Source: Octopus bimaculoides (Eukaryota). Taken from it: a DNA stretch of 43,675 nucleotides. Of the stretch, positions 930-22,855 are shown in pieces. The notes under the pieces are model-generated. The model saw nothing but the letters and a program-made list of their open reading frames with translations, was not told the origin of the DNA and did no database searches. The translations under genes were made by a program, and so were the position numbers. Numbering within the stretch: the stretch's first letter is position 1; the number at the start of each line of letters is the position of its first letter. The stretch covers positions 12,593,764 to 12,637,438 of the forward strand of contig NC_069006.1 of the NCBI RefSeq assembly GCF_001194135.2. The letters are read 5' to 3'.

Positions 930-967
<38 letters not shown>

Positions 968-1230
968 TTAACATCTGTTGTCCATGCTGGCATGAGTTGG
1001 ACGGTTTAACCAGGGCTGGTAAGCCGGAAGGCTGCACCAGGCTCCAGTCTGATTTGGCATGGTTTTCTACAGCTGGATGCCCTTTCTAATGCCAACAACT
1101 CTGAGAGTGTAATGGGTGTTTTTACGTGCCACCAGCATGGGTGCCATTTGTGTGACACCAATATCTGCCATGAATGATTTCTCTTGGCTTGACTGGTCTT
1201 CTTCACAAGCACAACATAATGCCAAAGAAT
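930..1230 (-). mobile_element. RTE-tailed SINE/short retroposon, older copy
   Basis: (CAT)n tail, then TTTAACATCTGTTGTCCATGCTGGCATGAGTTGGA...CTGGATGCCCTTTCTAATGCCAAC, matching the family at 19047, 35775 and 43525. Confidence 0.85.
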
Positions 1231-1634
1231 TTCCTGAGCATCTGTCCCTTACTTAACCCTGTACCATTCAGATTACTCTGTCAAATGTAAGGCATAGTTA
1301 TTCACGTTTTTTTAATTTTTATTAATCATGCATTATCTCAAAATTTCAAGATTTCAATGATGTGATTGTTTATTTTTAGAATGACATTGTAGGGTAGGTG
1401 TGAGATGCTGGATCTGGCTGGTTTGAACATNNNNNNNNNNNNNNNNNNNNNNNNNNNNNNNNNNNNNNNNNNNNNNNNNNNNNNNNNNNNNNNNNNNNNN
1501 NNNNNNNNNNNNNNNNNNNNNNNNNNNNNNNNNNNNNNNNNNNNNNNNNNNNNNNNNNNNNNNNNNNNNNNNNNNNNNNNNNNNNNNNNNNNNNNNNNNN
1601 NNNNNNNNNNNNNNNNNNNNNNNNNNNNNNNNNN

Positions 1635-1946
1635 ATTAACGTGCAAGTGGCTGAGCACTCCACAGACACGTGTACCCTTAACGTAGTTCTCGGGGATATT
1701 CAGCATGACACAGTGTGACAAGGCTGACCCTTTGAATTACAGGCACAACAGAAACAGGAAGTAAGAGTGAGAGAAAGTTGTGGTGAAAGAGTACAGCAGG
1801 GTTCGCCACCATCCCCTGCCGGAGCCTCGTGGAGCTTTAAGTGTTTTCGCTCAATAAACACTCACAACGCCTGGTCTGGGAATCGAAACCGGGATCCTAT
1901 GACCGCGAGTCTGCTACCCTAACCACTGGGCCATTGCGCCTCCACC
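1635..1946 (-). mobile_element. tRNA-derived SINE (3' end lost in the gap)
   Basis: Minus strand GGTGGAGGCGCAATGGCCCAGTGG (A box) ... GGTTTCGATTCCC (B box-like), followed by a non-tRNA body. Confidence 0.85.
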
Positions 1947-1956
1947 TAAGTTTGGG

Positions 1957-2076
1957 ATGCTTACAGCACCTAGGTTTCCCAAGCGGTCACCCATCTAAGT
2001 ACTCACTAGGCTCGATGTTGCTTAACTTCGGTGATCAGACGAGAACCAGTGCTCTCAGCGTGATATGGCCGTAATC
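1957..2076 (-). rRNA. 5S rRNA, full-length 120-nt copy (orphan gene, pseudogene or SINE head)
   Basis: The reverse complement reads GATTACGGCCATATCACGCTGAGAGCACTGGTTCTCGTCTGATCACCGAAGTTAAGCAACATCGAGCCTAGTGAGTACTTAGATGGGTGACCGCTTGGGAAACCTAGGTGCTGTAAGCAT. It is colinear with metazoan 5S and has recognisable box A (AGTTAAGC) and box C (TAGATGGGTGACC) regions. No oligo-T terminator follows. Confidence 0.95.
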
Positions 2077-2989
2077 ATAAAACAAGTATTTGGGTCTGAT
2101 ATGACTGGTTTAAATGCTAAAAGGTTAACCAACAAATAGCTTGGCCAATAATTCACTTACAGCATTGACCAACAAACTTGTCCAATAATTTGTAATATTC
2201 CACTTTGAGAATTTAAAAAATTCCAAGTTGGCACGAACATCCCTGACATGATAAATCAAGAAATATTTCATTTGAAACTGAATTCTTAATAATGAAAATA
2301 ATTGTTATCAATAACCCTGGGCAAAAAAGACAGTAGAAGTAACTGGAATTTTAATTAAAATTAAAAGCTTTTTCTGTTGCCCATCCTCTCTTGTTCCCAA
2401 GCAAAGAAATATTTTCCCATGGCCAGACTTGTTTATTGGAAACAAAATATACCACTTGCATCATCATGACACTTATTTACAAATGTCACACAATGTCAAG
2501 ACAAGGCATACACACACACACACACACACACACATTTATACACAATGGGTTTCTTTCCGTTTCTATCAGCCAACCCACTAACAGGCTTTGTTTTGCTTGG
2601 TGTTATAGAAAAACACACTTTCCCAAAATTGCCATACAATAGGGCTGAACCTAAAACAAGCTTCTTCACTGCACAACCATACCTGTACCTTTCTCTTTCT
2701 CTCTCTCTCACACACACACACCTTTTGTAATATACAAGATTCCATATACAAGATTGATTAAAGTTATTGTACTAAATTGTCCTAATTCTTGATTACTTTT
2801 TAAATGAATTAAAACCATTCATTTCATAAGGAATACAGTCACAGAAAGTTTCAAGTCTTTGTTGAACTCTATGCACCTGCCTGACAAAACAGTGGTGTGG
2901 ATGGTGAGGAGTAGGTGGAGGGTATATTGTGTGAAGATATATTGTCATTTCACAACAGGTGAAGATTAAGGGATTAAGGTTTACATATA

Positions 2990-5000: not shown

Positions 5001-5231
5001 ATATGTATATATGATTTTTTTTTACATCTCTATTATGTATTATTTACCATGGCTGGCTGTAATTGAAAAAGGCAAACATGCACTGAAAAATTCCATGATG
5101 GAATGAAAGTACGTGTCAGTATAAATGGTAAACTTTCTGAACATCTGCTGCAAGAGGAACTCATCATCTTTGCAAAAGAATGTAGGTCTCTAGAAGGACT
5201 GAAAAGTTACATCCATGCTGCTCATGGTTAA

Positions 5232-5452
5232 CCCTCTGGCATTTAGATTGCTCTGTCAAATGTAATGCTTACTTATTCAAATGTTTTGAATTGATCATAC
5301 ATTGCCTCATACCTCTGAGATTTCAATGATGTGATTGTTTATTTTTCTCAGATGACTTTGTAGGGCAGGTGTAATAGGCCAGATCTGGCTGGTTTGAACA
5401 TAAAACAGGTTGAATATTTGGGCCGGATATGGCTAGTTTAAATACTAAATGG
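5232..5452 (+). mobile_element. piggyBac-type MITE (family B)
   Basis: TTAA-CCCTCTGGCATT left end, TCAA at the right end; colinear with 36244-36464. Confidence 0.8.
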
Positions 5453-5527
5453 TCAAGAGAATCAACTGATGGCATTGCTTGAAATTGCGTTGCAGTGATC
5501 ATGTATGCATTACTGGGTTTTCTTTAA

Positions 5528-11231: not shown

Positions 11232-11814
11232 TTTTACTTGTTTCAGTCATTATTTGACTGCGGCCATGCTGGAGCACTGCCTTTTAGTCGAGCAAATCGA
11301 CCCCAGGACTTATTCTTTGGAAGCCTAGTACTTATTCTATCGATCTCTTTTGCCGAACCGCTAAGTTACGGGGACGTCAACACACCATCGGTTGTCAAGT
11401 GATGTTGGGGGGACAAACACAAACACACACACACACACACACACACANNNNNNNNNNNNNNNNNNNNNNNNNNNNNNNNNNNNNNNNNNNNNNNNNNNNN
11501 NNNNNNNNNNNNNNNNNNNNNNNNNNNNNNNNNNNNNNNNNNNNNNNNNNNNNNNNNNNNNNNNNNNNNNNNNNNNNNNNNNNNNNNNNNNNNNNNNNNN
11601 NNNNNNNNNNNNNNNNNNNNNNNNNNNNNNNNNNNNNNNACATACATATATACGACAGGCTTCTTTCAGTTTCCGTCTACCAAATCCACTCACAAGGCTT
11701 TGGTCTGCCCAAGGCTATAGTAGAAGACACTTGCCCAAGGTGCCACGCAGTGGGAATGAACCCGGAACCATGTGGTTGGTAAGCAAGCTACTTACCACAC
11801 AGCCACTCTTGCAC
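11232..11814 (-). mobile_element. CORE-type SINE, young full-length copy with an internal gap
   Basis: CpG-rich consensus-like sequence on both sides of the N-run 11448-11639, which falls in the internal (CA)n. Confidence 0.9.
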
Positions 11815-15385: not shown

Positions 15386-17552
15386 AACTTTTTCAGTCTT
15401 TAATCAGTTTTTTTGTTTTGCATGTTTGAAAGCAAAGTTTTAATTGATAATTATCTAGTTAATTAGTGGTGTGAGTGAGAAAGAGGAAGATAGATAGAAA
15501 GAGAGATAAGGACCAAAACTGATCTGTTGTAAACCATTCCACCAGATGGTGGAGAAGTGTGGTGGTGGTGATGATGGTAGGGTACAATGGTGTGGTGTTG
15601 TGGAGCAGCGATGATTATATGTCTGACTCTGGCATTACTATGTTTTTCTGACTTTACTAACTACACGGCTTCTCTCTCCCCCCTGTCCCTCCTGTAGAGA
15701 TTACGGGTGGGTAGGTGGGGAGACTAATGATGTATGGGTGTGGATATAAGCTATCAAGTAACAATCTGAAGTTCTGATCAGGTATGCATATATTTGTGGG
15801 TATCTGTGTGTATACATATGTGTGTGCGTGTGTGTATGTGTTTGTGTATTTACATACACATTCACTCATGTATGTGATGTATATATATATATACACATGC
15901 ATACATTCATACACACACACACATAGCCTTGCACACATGCTGGGTTTTCCTCTTCCTGATTTCGGGTGGCTGGGAGGGGGGTTGTTACCTACCCACTATT
16001 CCCACCTCATGTCATCTCTCTCTCTCTCCCCAAACCCCCAAGTAATATGTGACTCCCCCCCCCGTACCTCTCTTTCCCACCCCCTGCCCACTCCCTCTAT
16101 CTCATCCTGTCTCCTACTCTTCTCCATCTCCCCATTACCCATCCCTCCCATNNNNNNNNNNNNNNNNNNNNNNNNNNNNNNNNNNNNNNNNNNNNNNNNN
16201 NNNNNNNNNNNNNNNNNNNNNNNNNNNNNNNNNNNNNNNNNNNNNNNNNNNNNNNNNNNNNNNNNNNNNNNNNNNNNNNNNNNNNNNNNNNNNNNNNNNN
16301 NNNNNNNNNNNNNNNNNNNNNNNNNNNNNNNNNNNNNNNNNNNNNNNNNNNNNNNNNNNNNNNNNNNNNNNNNNNNNNNNNNNNNNNNNNNNNNNNNNNN
16401 NNNNNNNNNNNNNNNNNNNNNNNNNNNNNNNNNNNNNNNNNNNNNNNNNNNNNNNNNNNNNNNNNNNNNNNNNNNNNNNNNNNNNNNNNNNNNNNNNNNN
16501 NNNNNNNNNNNNNNNNNNNNNNNNNNNNNNNNNNNNNNNNNNNNNNNNNNNNNNNNNNNNNNNNNNNNNNNNNNNNNNNNNNNNNNNNNNNNNNNNNNNN
16601 NNNNNNNNNNNNNNNNNNNNNNNNNNNNNNNNNNNNNNNNNNNNNNNNNNNNNNNNNNNNNNNNNNNNNNNNNNNNNNNNNNNNNNNNNNNNNNNNNNNN
16701 NNNNNNNNNNNNNNNNNNNNNNNNNNNNNNNNNNNNNNNNNNNNNNNNNNNNNNNNNNNNNNNNNNNNNNNNNNNNNNNNNNNNNNNNNNNNNNNNNNNN
16801 NNNNNNNNNNNNNNNNNNNNNNNNNNNNNNNNNNNNNNNNNNNNNNNNNNNNNNNNNNNNNNNNNNNNNNNNNNNNNNNNNNNNNNNNNNNNNNNNNNNN
16901 NNNNNNNNNNNNNNNNNNNNNNNNNNNNNNNNNNNNNNNNNNNNNNNNNNNNNNNNNNNNNNNNNNNNNNNNNNNNNNNNNNNNNNNNNNNNNNNNNNNN
17001 NGGGGAGTTCCCTCTTAGGAATTTGCCATAAATGGCACCTTCCATCTGTAATAGATCTGATGTCGGGTAGGGCCGGAGAATGGGGAGGGTCTACACACAC
17101 ACATCTTTTCGTTTCCCTTGGGGGAGGTGATCTGCTCTATCACCACCACCATCATCATCATGTCAGCTTTTGTTGAATAATTCACACCTCTCTCCCACTA
17201 TTCTCTCCATTCGTCCATCACACATACATTCTTATATACACTGATACACACACACACATCACATATTCATAAATACATACACACAAGCATACAAACACAT
17301 ACACAGTCCCATACATACCATTAGATGTATGCACACGCACACACATGCCCACAAACTTGCACATGTATACACCAAACATATACATTCATGTACATGTTCA
17401 CCCCCCCCCACACACACACACTCACATACATGTATACATACACACACACACATTTATACACAGTTCTGAGATTTCTTCCTCTGATAATTTCTTTTCATAG
17501 TTAGAAAGGGGACAACTGAAAACTCATTTGGAAATATGATTACTATAGATAC

Positions 17553-19046: not shown

Positions 19047-19339
19047 ATCATCATCATCATCGTTTAACGTCCGCTTTCCATGCTAGCATGGGTTGGACGA
19101 TTTGACTGAGGACTGGTGAAACCGGATGGCAACACCAGGCTCCAGTCTAATTTGGCAGAGTTTCTACAGCTGGATGCCCTTCCTAACGCCAACCACTCAG
19201 AGAGTGTAGTGGGTGCTTTTACGTGCCACTGGCACGAAGGCCAGTCAGGCGGTACTGGCCACAGCCACGTTCAAAATGGTGTATTTTATGTGCCACCTGC
19301 ACAAGAGCCAGTCCAAAGGCACTGGCAATGATCTCGCTC
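19047..19339 (-). mobile_element. RTE-tailed SINE, young copy running into a gap
   Basis: Near-identical to 35775-36075 and 43525-43675. Confidence 0.9.
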
Positions 19340-20824
19340 NNNNNNNNNNNNNNNNNNNNNNNNNNNNNNNNNNNNNNNNNNNNNNNNNNNNNNNNNNNNN
19401 NNNNNNNNNNNNNNNNNNNNNNNNNNNNNNNNNNNNNNNNNNNNNNNNNNNNNNNNNNNNNNNNNNNNNNNNNNNNNNNNNNNNNNNNNNNNNNNNNNNN
19501 NNNNNNNNNNNNNNNNNNNNNNNNNNNNNNNNNNNNNNNNNNNNNNNNNNNNNNNNNNNNNNNNNNNNNNNNNNNNNNNNNNNNNNNNNNNNNNNNNNNN
19601 NNNNNNNNNNNNNNNNNNNNNNNNNNNNNNNNNNNNNNNNNNNNNNNNNNNNNNNNNNNNNNNNNNNNNNNNNNNNNNNNNNNNNNNNNNNNNNNNNNNN
19701 NNNNNNNNNNNNNNNNNNNNNNNNNNNNNNNNNNNNNNNNNNNNNNNNNNNNNNNNNNNNNNNNNNNNNNNNNNNNNNNNNNNNNNNNNNNNNNNNNNNN
19801 NNNNNNNNNNNNNNNNNNNNNNNNNNNNNNNNNNNNNNNNNNNNNNNNNNNNNNNNNNNNNNNNNNNNNNNNNNNNNNNNNNNNNNNNNNNNNNNNNNNN
19901 NNNNNNNNNNNNNNNNNNNNNNNNNNNNNNNNNNNNNNNNNNNNNNNNNNNNNNNNNNNNNNNNNNNNNNNNNNNNNNNNNNNNNNNNNNNNNNNNNNNN
20001 NNNNNNNNNNNNNNNNNNNNNNNNNNNNNNNNNNNNNNNNNNNNNNNNNNNNNNNNNNNNNNNNNNNNNNNNNNNNNNNNNNNNNNNNNNNNNNNNNNNN
20101 NNNNNNNNNNNNNNNNNNNNNNNNNNNNNNNNNNNNNNNNNNNNNNNNNNNNNNNNNNNNNNNNNNNNNNNNNNNNNNNNNNNNNNNNNNNNNNNNNNNN
20201 NNNNNNNNNNNNNNNNNNNNNNNNNNNNNNNNNNNNNNNNNNNNNNNNNNNNNNNNNNNNNNNNNNNNNNNNNNNNNNNNNNNNNNNNNNNNNNNNNNNN
20301 NNNNNNNNNNNNNNNNNNNNNTAATCATCCCTTCATCCATTATAAATAACATGTATATTATATACAAAAAACATCTTACATAAATTATCATTGTTTTAAA
20401 TTATCATTGTTTTAAATTATCATTGTTTTAAATACAATTTGAACGAAGTTTAAGTTTAAAATAATAATGAAGATAAAATTAGTACATATTTAACCGGTGT
20501 TATAGTTAAAGCTATACTATTTAAAGCTAAAGACGTTTATTTAATTATAATTAAAAATCTATTGAATAATAGAAAATACAAGATTATTTATTTCTACAAA
20601 CGTAATAATAAAAATATGAATGAAAAAATTATGAATGGAAAAATTATATATATATATATGCTCACATTCCAAAAGCTATTATTTAGCTTTTATATTGTTA
20701 TAATATAACATTATAAAAGGTGGTATTTGTTGTCAGAGGTAGCTTAGCATAATGGTACAGAGCGCTTGAGTGGCACAGAATTTGATTCTCTGTAGTGGCT
20801 TGCTGTATCTTGTGTTCAAAATTT

Positions 20825-22659: not shown

Positions 22660-22855
22660 GGTCTCACATGAAAGCATTCATGTGGTGCCACATTAAAATC
22701 ACCCAGCACATACTGTAAAGTAGTTGGTGTTAGGAAGGGCATCCATCTGCAGAAACCAAGCCAAATCAGACTGGAGTCTGGTGGAGCTCTCCAGCTTGCC
22801 ATCTCCACTCAAACTGTCCAACCCATGCCAGCATTGAAAACGGGCATTAAAGGAT
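22660..22855 (+). mobile_element. RTE-tailed SINE
   Basis: GTTGGTGTTAGGAAGGGCATCCA ... GTCCAACCCATGCCAGCAT. Confidence 0.8.

What the first reader, a model, noticed from the sequence alone, without database searches (positions are those of the whole stretch)
1257..2124. 5S rRNA fused to a tRNA-derived SINE and inserted as one block: candidate dimeric 5S-tRNA SINE
Seen: on the minus strand a complete 5S sequence (2076-1957) is followed, after a spacer of only 10 nt (CCCAAACTTA), by a tRNA-headed SINE (from 1946). The whole block interrupts a piggyBac MITE at a single point (..GTTTGAACAT | AAAACA.., compared with the intact copy at 5232-5452), and the 5S 5' end abuts the MITE directly. Known: 5S-headed SINEs and 5S+tRNA composites exist (SINE3, AmnSINE1, megabat MEG families). 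Inference: this is one retroposed transcript carrying both type 1 and type 2 Pol III promoters, and possibly a cephalopod composite family. I do not know whether it is already catalogued.
Basis: partly seen in the sequence, partly recalled or inferred. Interest (0 to 1): 0.75.

Follow-up and report, generated by a model that had tools for sequence, protein, structure and literature searches.

The report
Single-copy 5S rRNA–SINE chimeric retrocopy
A full 5S rRNA copy, still carrying the first bases of its gene's 3' trailer, sits head-to-tail against one copy of the genome's most abundant SINE inside a small DNA transposon, but this joint exists only once per genome, so it is a one-off retroposition product and not a new 5S-tRNA SINE family.

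Summary
The sequence features are real. Rfam calls a complete 5S rRNA on the minus strand (2076-1958, 97.9 bits). Eleven nt later a SINE begins at its canonical 5' end (1945/1946); it has roughly 30,000 copies and a degenerate tRNA-like head. The 5S +1 base abuts the break point of a TTAA-flanked MITE whose two halves are exactly complementary.

The "10-nt spacer" is not a linker. It matches the native 3' trailer of a minor 5S gene class, which in other copies runs on into a T4-5 terminator. The window copy stops after TT.

The 5S/SINE junction is single-copy. One exact contig at single-copy depth occurs in one run, one variant contig in three other runs, and about 1-3 loosely similar crossings per genome at 80% identity. 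The MITE/5S junction is shared by at least 8 individuals of one species.

The best reading (about 0.55) is one chimeric retroposition event, in which a LINE reverse transcriptase copying a SINE RNA continued onto a primary 5S transcript, or a 5S read-through transcript was retroposed. Two sequential insertions (about 0.3) cannot be excluded, because the gap at 1431-1634 hides the SINE tail and the target-site duplications, and it could not be closed.

The parts
2125..2128 (.). TTAA target site at one end of the host MITE
   Evidence: Read directly; alignment with other MITE copies.
2077..2124 (-). MITE arm immediately upstream (5') of the 5S; on the + strand it starts ATAAAACAAG...
   Evidence: Aligns to the right part of the intact copy 5225-5460. 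31-mers across 2076/2077 are held by 11 runs from at least 8 samples of organism A.
1958..2076 (-). Complete 5S rRNA copy. It differs from the genomic majority 5S at 7 of 119 positions (2, 19, 23, 29, 40, 73, 102); box A, IE and box C are unchanged.
   Evidence: Rfam 97.9 bits, model 1-120; majority letters from raw reads; comparison.
1947..1957 (-). It matches the native downstream flank of a minor 5S gene class, cut short within the terminator T-run (TT instead of T4-5).
   Evidence: About 45-75 single-copy equivalents of 5S-like contigs run through it to 1948 and then continue TT(A/T)A(A/T)GGGGG. About 160 raw reads per run cover it, with majority C-N-C-A-C-A-C-(C/T)-T.
1635..1946 (-). Visible 312 nt of a very abundant SINE, complete at its 5' end, 6/312 (1.9%) from the family majority. 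It continues into the gap.
   Evidence: Word depth about 1e7 against about 60 in unique sequence; raw-read depth about 23,400 at roughly 0.7x coverage; loose ends start at 1945/1946; continuation consensus.
1923..1933 (-). Pol III box A of the SINE head (TGGCCCAGTGG)
   Evidence: Exact match to TRGCNNAGTGG.
1879..1890 (-). Pol III box B-like motif (GGTTTCGATTCC; one extra T compared with GGTTCGANNCC)
   Evidence: part of the degenerate cloverleaf.
1431..1634 (.). Assembly gap (204 N, length estimated) hiding the rest of the SINE, its tail and any target-site duplications
   Evidence: Not closable with the available contigs.
1257..1430 (-). The other MITE arm, downstream (3') of the block; on the + strand it ends ...GGTTTGAACAT
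   Evidence: 79-81% identity to MITE copies at 5240-5401 and 36253-36400; alignment.
1253..1256 (.). TTAA target site at the other end of the MITE
   Evidence: Read directly.

Best explanation
This is a unique chimeric retrocopy, not a SINE family.

A primary 5S rRNA transcript from a minor 5S gene class was joined head-to-tail to a full-length RNA of the genome's dominant tRNA-like SINE. The 5S transcript runs from +1 and still carries its 3' trailer up to the first U's of the terminator. The pair was integrated in a single target-primed reverse transcription event into a piggyBac-like MITE.

The preferred mechanism is template switching. The SINE's partner LINE reverse transcriptase primed on the SINE tail, copied the SINE RNA to its 5' end, and then switched template to the 3' end of a nascent 5S transcript and copied it to +1, leaving 1-2 filler bases (A or AG).

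A sub-variant has the same outcome. A SINE had landed in or next to the terminator of a 5S gene, Pol III read through from the 5S promoter into the SINE, and that dimeric RNA was retroposed through the SINE tail.

Shown: the boundaries, the orientation, the trailer identity, single-copy status, and sharing among individuals. Inferred: that it was one event, and the RT template switch. The locus keeps an unmutated 5S internal promoter, SINE boxes A and B, and no T4 terminator in the visible 442 nt. It could therefore in principle be transcribed as a dimer, but there is no sign that it ever amplified.
For: The 5S is full length and starts exactly at +1 against the MITE break, which indicates an RNA intermediate and not a DNA copy of a gene. 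The major 5S genes have their own upstream flank (...TCTGAT|GTTTACGG).

The 11 nt after the 5S match the native trailer shared by about 45-75 single-copy equivalents of 5S copies. In those copies the trailer continues into T4-5 (CTT+TTAAGG.. or TTTATGG..). The window copy ends after TT, as expected for the 3' end of a Pol III primary transcript.

The SINE begins at the family's canonical 5' end, 1945/1946, in the same orientation.

The T-rich sequence typical of SINE upstream flanks lies upstream of the 5S (CTTGTTTTAT), not upstream of the SINE (CCCAAACTTAG).

The junction is single-copy. The MITE/5S junction is present in at least 8 samples.

The literature describes exactly this process as the proposed origin of 5S+tRNA composite heads and of small-RNA chimeric retrogenes (PMC4824008, PMC4758252, bioRxiv 10.1101/2025.02.02.635956).
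Against: The SINE tail and the 3' target-site duplication are in the gap, so a single TSD flanking the whole block is not shown. The visible 'AT' duplication is 2 nt and ambiguous.

Random adjacency is not negligible. I estimate about 0.1-0.4 such same-strand 5S/SINE neighbours per genome by chance (assuming a 2.7-Gb genome), and more if SINEs prefer T-runs.

The 5S part is 5.9% from the majority 5S while the SINE is 1.9% from its consensus. That could mean the 5S is older than the SINE, or only that it comes from a variant 5S gene class.

In mammalian 5S/LINE-1 chimeras the 5S part is mostly antisense and truncated (bioRxiv 10.1101/2025.02.02.635956), unlike here.

The strongly divergent second haplotype at the junction (4 mismatches plus 2 gaps in 61 nt) is unexplained.
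Confidence: 0.55

Rival explanations
1. Two sequential, independent insertions. A solo 5S retropseudogene (a primary transcript ending in its U-run) first landed in the MITE. Later a SINE inserted into the T-rich end of that pseudogene.
For: SINE copies prefer T/A-rich targets: the upstream flank consensus is T-rich, and the 5S trailer's T-run is such a target. Insertion there would split the T-run and leave 'CTT' upstream, as seen. The 5S is more diverged from its majority (5.9%) than the SINE is from its own (1.9%). Chance adjacency is about 0.1-0.4 per genome even without target preference. Two different haplotypes exist at the junction.
Against: It needs two rare events at the same few bases. 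A solo 5S transcript has no LINE-type tail to prime its own retroposition. The extra A/AG between CTT and the SINE 5' end is not explained by a clean insertion. The 5S divergence may only reflect origin from a variant gene class, since 17-20% of 5S reads share the window's letters at positions 19 and 23.
Confidence: 0.3
2. One reading: a member or master copy of an amplified dimeric 5S-tRNA SINE family (SINE3, AmnSINE1 or MEG-like) in cephalopods.
For: The architecture fits: a 5S head with intact box A, IE and box C, a tRNA-like module with boxes A and B, and no T4 terminator between them. At 80% likeness 1-3 further single-copy contigs per run cross from 5S into the first 10-20 nt of a SINE-like head. 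Loose ends after the trailer in other 5S copies are G-rich and faintly SINE-head-like.
Against: The exact junction is single-copy and indexed in one run only. Of about 23,000 raw reads per run over the SINE 5' end, the flank beyond 1945 is unrelated AT-rich sequence (agreement 0.36). The 5S copies that share the trailer continue into a T-run and heterogeneous sequence, not into this SINE. No such family is described in the cephalopod or mollusc SINE literature I could search.
Confidence: 0.07
3. Assembly artefact: the 5S/SINE join or the scaffold join across the gap is wrong.
For: An N gap lies inside the feature. The runs of the 2015 sample do not hold the exact 5S/SINE junction words, and X2 and X4, like X13, show a variant contig instead.
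Against: Independent run X1 holds the exact junction at single-copy depth. The MITE/5S junction is in 11 runs. The two MITE arms on either side of the gap are exactly complementary halves, which a wrong join would not produce.
Confidence: 0.03
4. A DNA-level fragment of a 5S gene with a neighbouring SINE was copied or transduced into the MITE without an RNA intermediate.
For: The trailer matches genomic 5S flank sequence. 'AT' before +1 also matches the native -2/-1 of the major 5S genes.
Against: The boundary falls at the transcription start. Beyond 'AT' the upstream sequence is MITE, not the 5S upstream flank. The T-run is truncated where a transcript would end.
Confidence: 0.05

Closest known systems
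Chimeric retrogenes / bipartite retrocopies made by LINE RT template switching (Buzdin et al. 2003, as cited in PMC4758252 and PMC4824008; U6/LINE-1 and 5S/LINE-1 chimeras in bioRxiv 10.1101/2025.02.02.635956)
   Same: A small Pol III RNA sits 5' of a retroelement copy in the same orientation, joined at RNA termini. Each chimera is a unique locus, and it is made in one TPRT event.
   Different: The 5S keeps a 3' trailer. In primates the 5S/LINE-1 chimeras are mostly antisense and truncated at positions 46 or 90. The single flanking TSD is not yet shown here.
AmnSINE1 / DeuSINE-type composite heads (5S rRNA + partial tRNA; Nishihara et al. 2006, as summarised in PMC4824008 and PMC4758252) and megabat MEG, zebrafish SINE3
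   Same: A 5S sequence with its internal promoter is fused upstream of a tRNA-derived SINE module. [quoted passage not shown]
   Different: Those are amplified families (hundreds to thousands of copies) in which the tRNA part is partly lost and the 5S promoter has taken over. Here the joint is single-copy, both modules are complete, and a gene trailer is retained. It looks like the unamplified first product of that process. The Deu domain was not tested.
Ordinary tRNA-derived SINE (SINE2) insertion next to a 5S pseudogene
   Same: The SINE part is a standard, near-consensus, 5'-complete copy of a family with roughly 30,000 or more copies.
   Different: The exact juxtaposition with a +1-to-trailer 5S copy at a single MITE break point.

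Membership tests
Composite 5S-tRNA / 5S-headed SINE family (SINE3, AmnSINE1, MEG type) | 5S-derived head retaining the type 1 internal promoter (box A, IE, box C) | tested here: met
   Rfam 97.9 bits, full length. Positions 50-64, 67-72 and 80-97 are identical to the genomic majority 5S. Promoter activity itself was not assayed.
Composite 5S-tRNA / 5S-headed SINE family (SINE3, AmnSINE1, MEG type) | Many dispersed copies sharing the same 5S-body junction, each with its own flanks and TSD | tested here: not met
   There is one exact contig at single-copy depth in X1, one variant contig in each of X2, X4 and X13, and 1-3 loose crossings at 80%. The junction words occur in one run only. SINE 5' flanks are unrelated AT-rich sequence.
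Composite 5S-tRNA / 5S-headed SINE family (SINE3, AmnSINE1, MEG type) | LINE-related 3' tail and flanking TSD | not testable with these tools
   The tail and 3' junction lie in the gap 1431-1634, and the contigs are too short to close it.
Composite 5S-tRNA / 5S-headed SINE family (SINE3, AmnSINE1, MEG type) | Deu central domain (for AmnSINE1/DeuSINE membership specifically) | not tested
Chimeric retrocopy (small Pol III RNA + retroelement, one TPRT event) | 5' partner is a small RNA copy starting at its transcription start, in sense with the 3' partner | tested here: met
   Model position 1 is at 2076 and abuts the MITE. Both parts are on the minus strand.
Chimeric retrocopy (small Pol III RNA + retroelement, one TPRT event) | Junction lies at RNA ends (3' end of one transcript, 5' end of the other), with at most a few filler bases | tested here: met
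   The trailer stops inside the position of the terminator T-run seen in sister 5S copies. The SINE starts at the family's 5' end, 1945/1946. There are 1-2 extra bases.
Chimeric retrocopy (small Pol III RNA + retroelement, one TPRT event) | One TSD flanks the whole chimera, and the 3' partner ends in its normal tail | tested here: inconclusive
   Only 'AT' is visible on both sides, and it is ambiguous. The rest is in the gap.
Chimeric retrocopy (small Pol III RNA + retroelement, one TPRT event) | Unique locus (not amplified) | tested here: met
tRNA-derived SINE (SINE2) | Internal box A and box B at tRNA-like spacing | tested here: met
   TGGCCCAGTGG at 1933-1923 and GGTTTCGATTCC at 1890-1879.
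tRNA-derived SINE (SINE2) | Recognisable tRNA cloverleaf homology of the head | tested here: inconclusive
   ARAGORN default and Rfam tRNA give no hit. A degenerate cloverleaf with an abnormal anticodon loop appears only on the majority-corrected head at 70% threshold.
tRNA-derived SINE (SINE2) | High-copy dispersed family with a defined 5' end and variable flanks | tested here: met
   Raw-read depth is about 23,400 at roughly 0.7x coverage, and flank agreement is 0.36. Contig depth is about 1e7.
Functional 5S rRNA gene | Native upstream flank and a T>=4 terminator just downstream | tested here: not met
   The upstream sequence is MITE. There is no T4 run from +1 to the gap. Other 5S copies do have T-runs. 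Position 2 (T to A) breaks a helix I pair.
piggyBac-type MITE (host element) | TTAA target duplication and CC(C/T)T...-type terminal inverted repeats; multiple copies | tested here: met
   TTAA at 1253-1256 and 2125-2128. The ends read CCCTGTACCATTCAG... and CCTTTTAGCATTTAA.... Copies lie at 5225-5460, 24270-24470 and 36240-36480, and word depth is about 1e5. No transposase relationship was tested.

The most novel reading that the evidence does not exclude
The locus is a living 'proto-SINE'. It would be a fixed, still promoter-competent dimer: an intact type 1 5S promoter, type 2 boxes, and no terminator in between. Pol III would transcribe it from the 5S +1 through the SINE. The second, strongly divergent haplotype and the 1-3 loosely similar junction-crossing contigs per genome would then be early daughter or sister copies. 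That would be the birth of a 5S-tRNA composite SINE caught before amplification, in an invertebrate.
Probability: 0.1. Interest if true: 0.6.

Novelty: new member of a known kind. Interest (0 to 1): 0.3.

Why it matters
Composite 5S+tRNA SINE heads such as AmnSINE1 are explained in the literature by an RT template switch from a SINE RNA to 5S rRNA, but only the amplified and already remodelled descendants are usually seen. This locus looks like the raw, unamplified product of that step. Both modules are complete and the 5S even keeps its gene trailer, which marks the 3' partner of the joint as a primary Pol III transcript. It is a useful illustration, and a reminder for annotators that a 5S-SINE neighbour is not a family until the junction has been counted. 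It does not change what is known about SINEs, and its single-event origin is still unproven.

Tried and rejected
- Gap closure failed. At 99% likeness the MITE-side contigs are 31-37 nt and multi-copy. On the SINE side only the family consensus extends.
- tRNA detection on the head was negative at default settings with both ARAGORN and the Rfam tRNA model.
- I first suspected that the roughly 50-75 5S copies sharing the 'spacer' were a 5S-SINE composite family, because their downstream loose ends are G-rich and one consensus resembled the SINE head. I rejected this. At 80% likeness they still do not align into the SINE, their continuation starts with a T4-5 run, and contig overhang lengths vary (0-98 nt).
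- I considered a Cassandra/Ajax/Helenus-type LTR element with 5S or tRNA in its LTRs (PMC10886601). There is no LTR structure here, and Ajax is reported only from nemerteans.
- Metagenome scans for the junction and for the SINE head were both empty, so they are uninformative.
- A full-text search for the SINE's sequence strings found nothing.
- The octopus genome paper and Buzdin 2003 are not held.
- ORF listing found no genes that could confirm the organism.
- RNA evidence was not obtained. No indexed RNA run holds the junction words (only 3 sampled words).
Full report
**What is there**

On the minus strand, Rfam finds one complete 5S rRNA at 2076-1958 (97.9 bits, E=2.9e-20, model positions 1-120). 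It is the only Rfam hit at gathering score in the 43.7-kb window. The sequence then reads T-CCCAAACTTA-G (1957-1946), followed by GTGGAGGCGCAATGGCCCAGTGG..., which runs for 312 nt to the assembly gap (1431-1634, 204 N).

Upstream of the 5S +1 base the sequence is the arm of a TTAA-flanked MITE (2077-2124, TTAA at 2125-2128). Beyond the gap lies the other arm (1257-1430, TTAA at 1253-1256). Aligned with the intact copy at 5225-5460, one arm ends ...GGTTTGAACAT and the other resumes ATAAAACAAG..., where the intact copy reads ...GAACATAAAACAGG.... The halves are exactly complementary, which also argues that the scaffold join across the gap is correct.

**The SINE**

Laying Logan contigs of four DNA runs of the same organism gives a word depth of about 1e7 over 1640-1945, against 55-100 in the unique flank 2147-2400. 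Raw reads from three 2026 runs (about 1.93 Gb read from each) give a depth of about 23,400 over the first 30 nt of the element. That is roughly 28,000-36,000 5'-complete copies if the genome is 2.3-3.0 Gb, which is my assumption.

In run X32, 14,058 reads lose similarity exactly at 1945, with smaller groups at 1944 (1,656), 1946 (1,567), 1943 (853) and 1947 (390). What follows is AT-rich with no consensus (agreement 0.36). So 1945/1946 is the family's true 5' end, and typical copies are not preceded by 5S.

The window copy differs from the family majority at 6 of 312 positions. The head carries a perfect box A and a box B with one extra T. Neither ARAGORN nor the Rfam tRNA model recognises it. 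Only the majority-corrected head yields a degenerate cloverleaf, at 70% of ARAGORN's threshold. 'tRNA-like' is therefore fair, but 'tRNA-headed' is not demonstrated.

**The 5S and its 'spacer'**

Raw reads give a depth of about 1,200 over the 5S core, or roughly 1,500-1,900 5S-like copies. The majority sequence is GTTTACGGCCATATCACGTTGAAAGCACCGGTTCTCGTCCGATCAC.... The window copy differs from it at 7 of 119 positions (2, 19, 23, 29, 40, 73, 102). None of these lies in the stretches that correspond to box A, IE and box C.

The major genes have their own upstream flank (...TCTGAT|GTTTACGG, agreement 0.57-0.69). Several 3'-flank classes carry T-runs, for example GCATC-TCACATTTTT.

About 45-75 single-copy equivalents of 5S-like contigs run through them to 1948. 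About 160 raw reads per run cover them, with majority C-N-C-A-C-A-C-(C/T)-T. Where those copies leave the window sequence, all four runs continue with TT(A/T)A(A/T)GGGGG. That means ...AAACTT+TT(T)A..., a T4-5 Pol III terminator.

The 'spacer' is therefore best read as the native 3' trailer of a minor 5S gene class. The window copy stops two T's into the terminator, then has A(G), then the SINE. No T4 run occurs anywhere from 5S +1 to the gap.

**Copy number of the junction**

- Run X1 holds a 56-nt contig covering 1922-1977 with 0 mismatches at depth 42.4, which is single-copy level.
- With only 10 nt of SINE in the target, depth over 1936-1944 is 42.4 in X1 and 0 in X2, X4 and X13.
- At 80% likeness, depth over 1927-1932 is 42.4, 0, 57.3 and 12.2, and about 3 contigs reach 1936-1944 in X1.
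- The three indexed 31-mers across the junction occur in X1 only, among all indexed runs of any kind.
- X2 and X4 show one single-copy contig over 1917-1977 with 4 mismatches and 2 gaps. The single contig that reaches 1927-1932 at 80% likeness in X4 and X13 is presumably the same variant. X1 lacks it.
- The two indexed words across the MITE/5S junction occur in 11 runs from at least 8 samples, all of organism A.

The 5S insertion is therefore shared, probably fixed, in this species. The 5S/SINE joint is one locus with two divergent haplotypes, and there is no amplified composite family.

**How it most likely arose**

Several points indicate a join between RNA ends:
- The 5S copy starts at the transcription start.
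- It ends inside the terminator position of its gene class.
- The SINE starts at its canonical 5' end, in the same orientation.
- The pair sits in one break of a MITE.
- The T-rich sequence typical of SINE upstream flanks lies before the 5S (CTTGTTTTAT), not before the SINE.

This matches the template-switch model that the literature uses both for small-RNA chimeric retrogenes and for the origin of 5S+tRNA composite SINE heads (PMC4824008, PMC4758252; 5S/LINE-1 chimeras in bioRxiv 10.1101/2025.02.02.635956). A read-through transcript from a 5S gene whose terminator had been hit by a SINE would give the same product, and it predicts a source locus. I give the single-event reading about 0.55.

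**What keeps the rival alive**

The tail, the 3' junction and any TSDs are inside the gap, which I could not close. The only visible duplication is 'AT', and the major 5S genes also have AT at -2/-1. Random same-strand adjacency within 12 bp is expected about 0.1-0.4 times per genome, and more often if SINEs favour T-runs. The 5S is more diverged from its majority (5.9%) than the SINE is from its own (1.9%). Two sequential insertions therefore get about 0.3. An assembly artefact is unlikely given.

**Comparison with known systems and novelty**

It works like a Buzdin-type chimeric retrocopy, and it resembles the hypothetical first step towards AmnSINE1, MEG or SINE3-like composite SINEs. It fails the defining test of a SINE family, which is many copies sharing the junction.

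I found no description of a 5S-tRNA composite in cephalopod or mollusc SINE papers. A curated O. vulgaris annotation lists one automatically classed '5S' SINE family with 7 recent insertions, but no composite (PMC13282606).

It is a new instance of a known kind and of modest interest. It would become more interesting only if the locus proves to be transcribed as a dimer, or if daughter copies turn up in a complete assembly.

**Limits**

- The organism is coded in the read tools, and no gene in the window allowed me to confirm it.
- Contig depths are k-mer depths summed over contigs.
- rest on 3 and 2 sampled words.
- The letters of the variant haplotype and any RNA evidence could not be obtained within the read laying cap.

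Noticed in passing
window 930-1203 (minus strand), and copies at 28484-28737, 35772-35968, 19047-19229, 43523-43675, 37890-38031, 22679-22841, 31458-31595 and others: A different, very abundant SINE-like 3' module (...GGCATCCAGCTGTAGAAA...CATGCCAGCATGGACAACAGATGTTAAATG) ends in an (ATG)n microsatellite tail. It has at least 10 copies at 78-86% identity in the 43-kb window. None of them carries the head found at 1635-1946, so it belongs to another family or consists of 5'-truncated copies.
   Followed up: partly
window 1917-1977: There are two haplotypes of the 5S/SINE junction. The window's version occurs only in run X1. X2, X4 and X13 appear to carry a single-copy variant with 4 mismatches plus 2 gaps, although the flank 2099-2400 is 100% identical in all four runs. 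Gene conversion from another 5S or SINE copy, or a difference in T-run length, is possible. The variant's letters were not seen.
   Followed up: partly
window 1958-2076 used as a probe (genome-wide): The genome holds roughly 1,500-1,900 5S-like copies in several classes with different 3' flanks and terminators. Examples are GCATC-TCACATTTTT, GCAT-TTTATATGC, AGCA-AAATCTTTTTTT, and the CCCA(C/A)AC(C/T)TTTT class. About 17-20% of them share the window's variant letters at positions 19 and 23. A few reads show 5S units separated by only 18 nt (joint 2074 to 1965).
   Followed up: partly
window 5225-5460, 24270-24470, 36240-36480: These are further copies of the TTAA-flanked MITE. The copy at 24270-24470 has internal deletions, one of which removes the very segment where the 5S-SINE block is inserted. 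Contig joints show many such deletion variants genome-wide (joints 1405 to 2087-2108).
   Followed up: partly
window 1431-1634, 11448-11639, 16152-17001, 19340-20321, 26853-27174, 30975-31124, 38594-38650: There are seven N gaps in 43.7 kb, several of them bordered by dinucleotide or trinucleotide microsatellites (for example the (TA/TG)-type runs around 26853-27174). The window has no credible protein-coding ORF.
   Followed up: no
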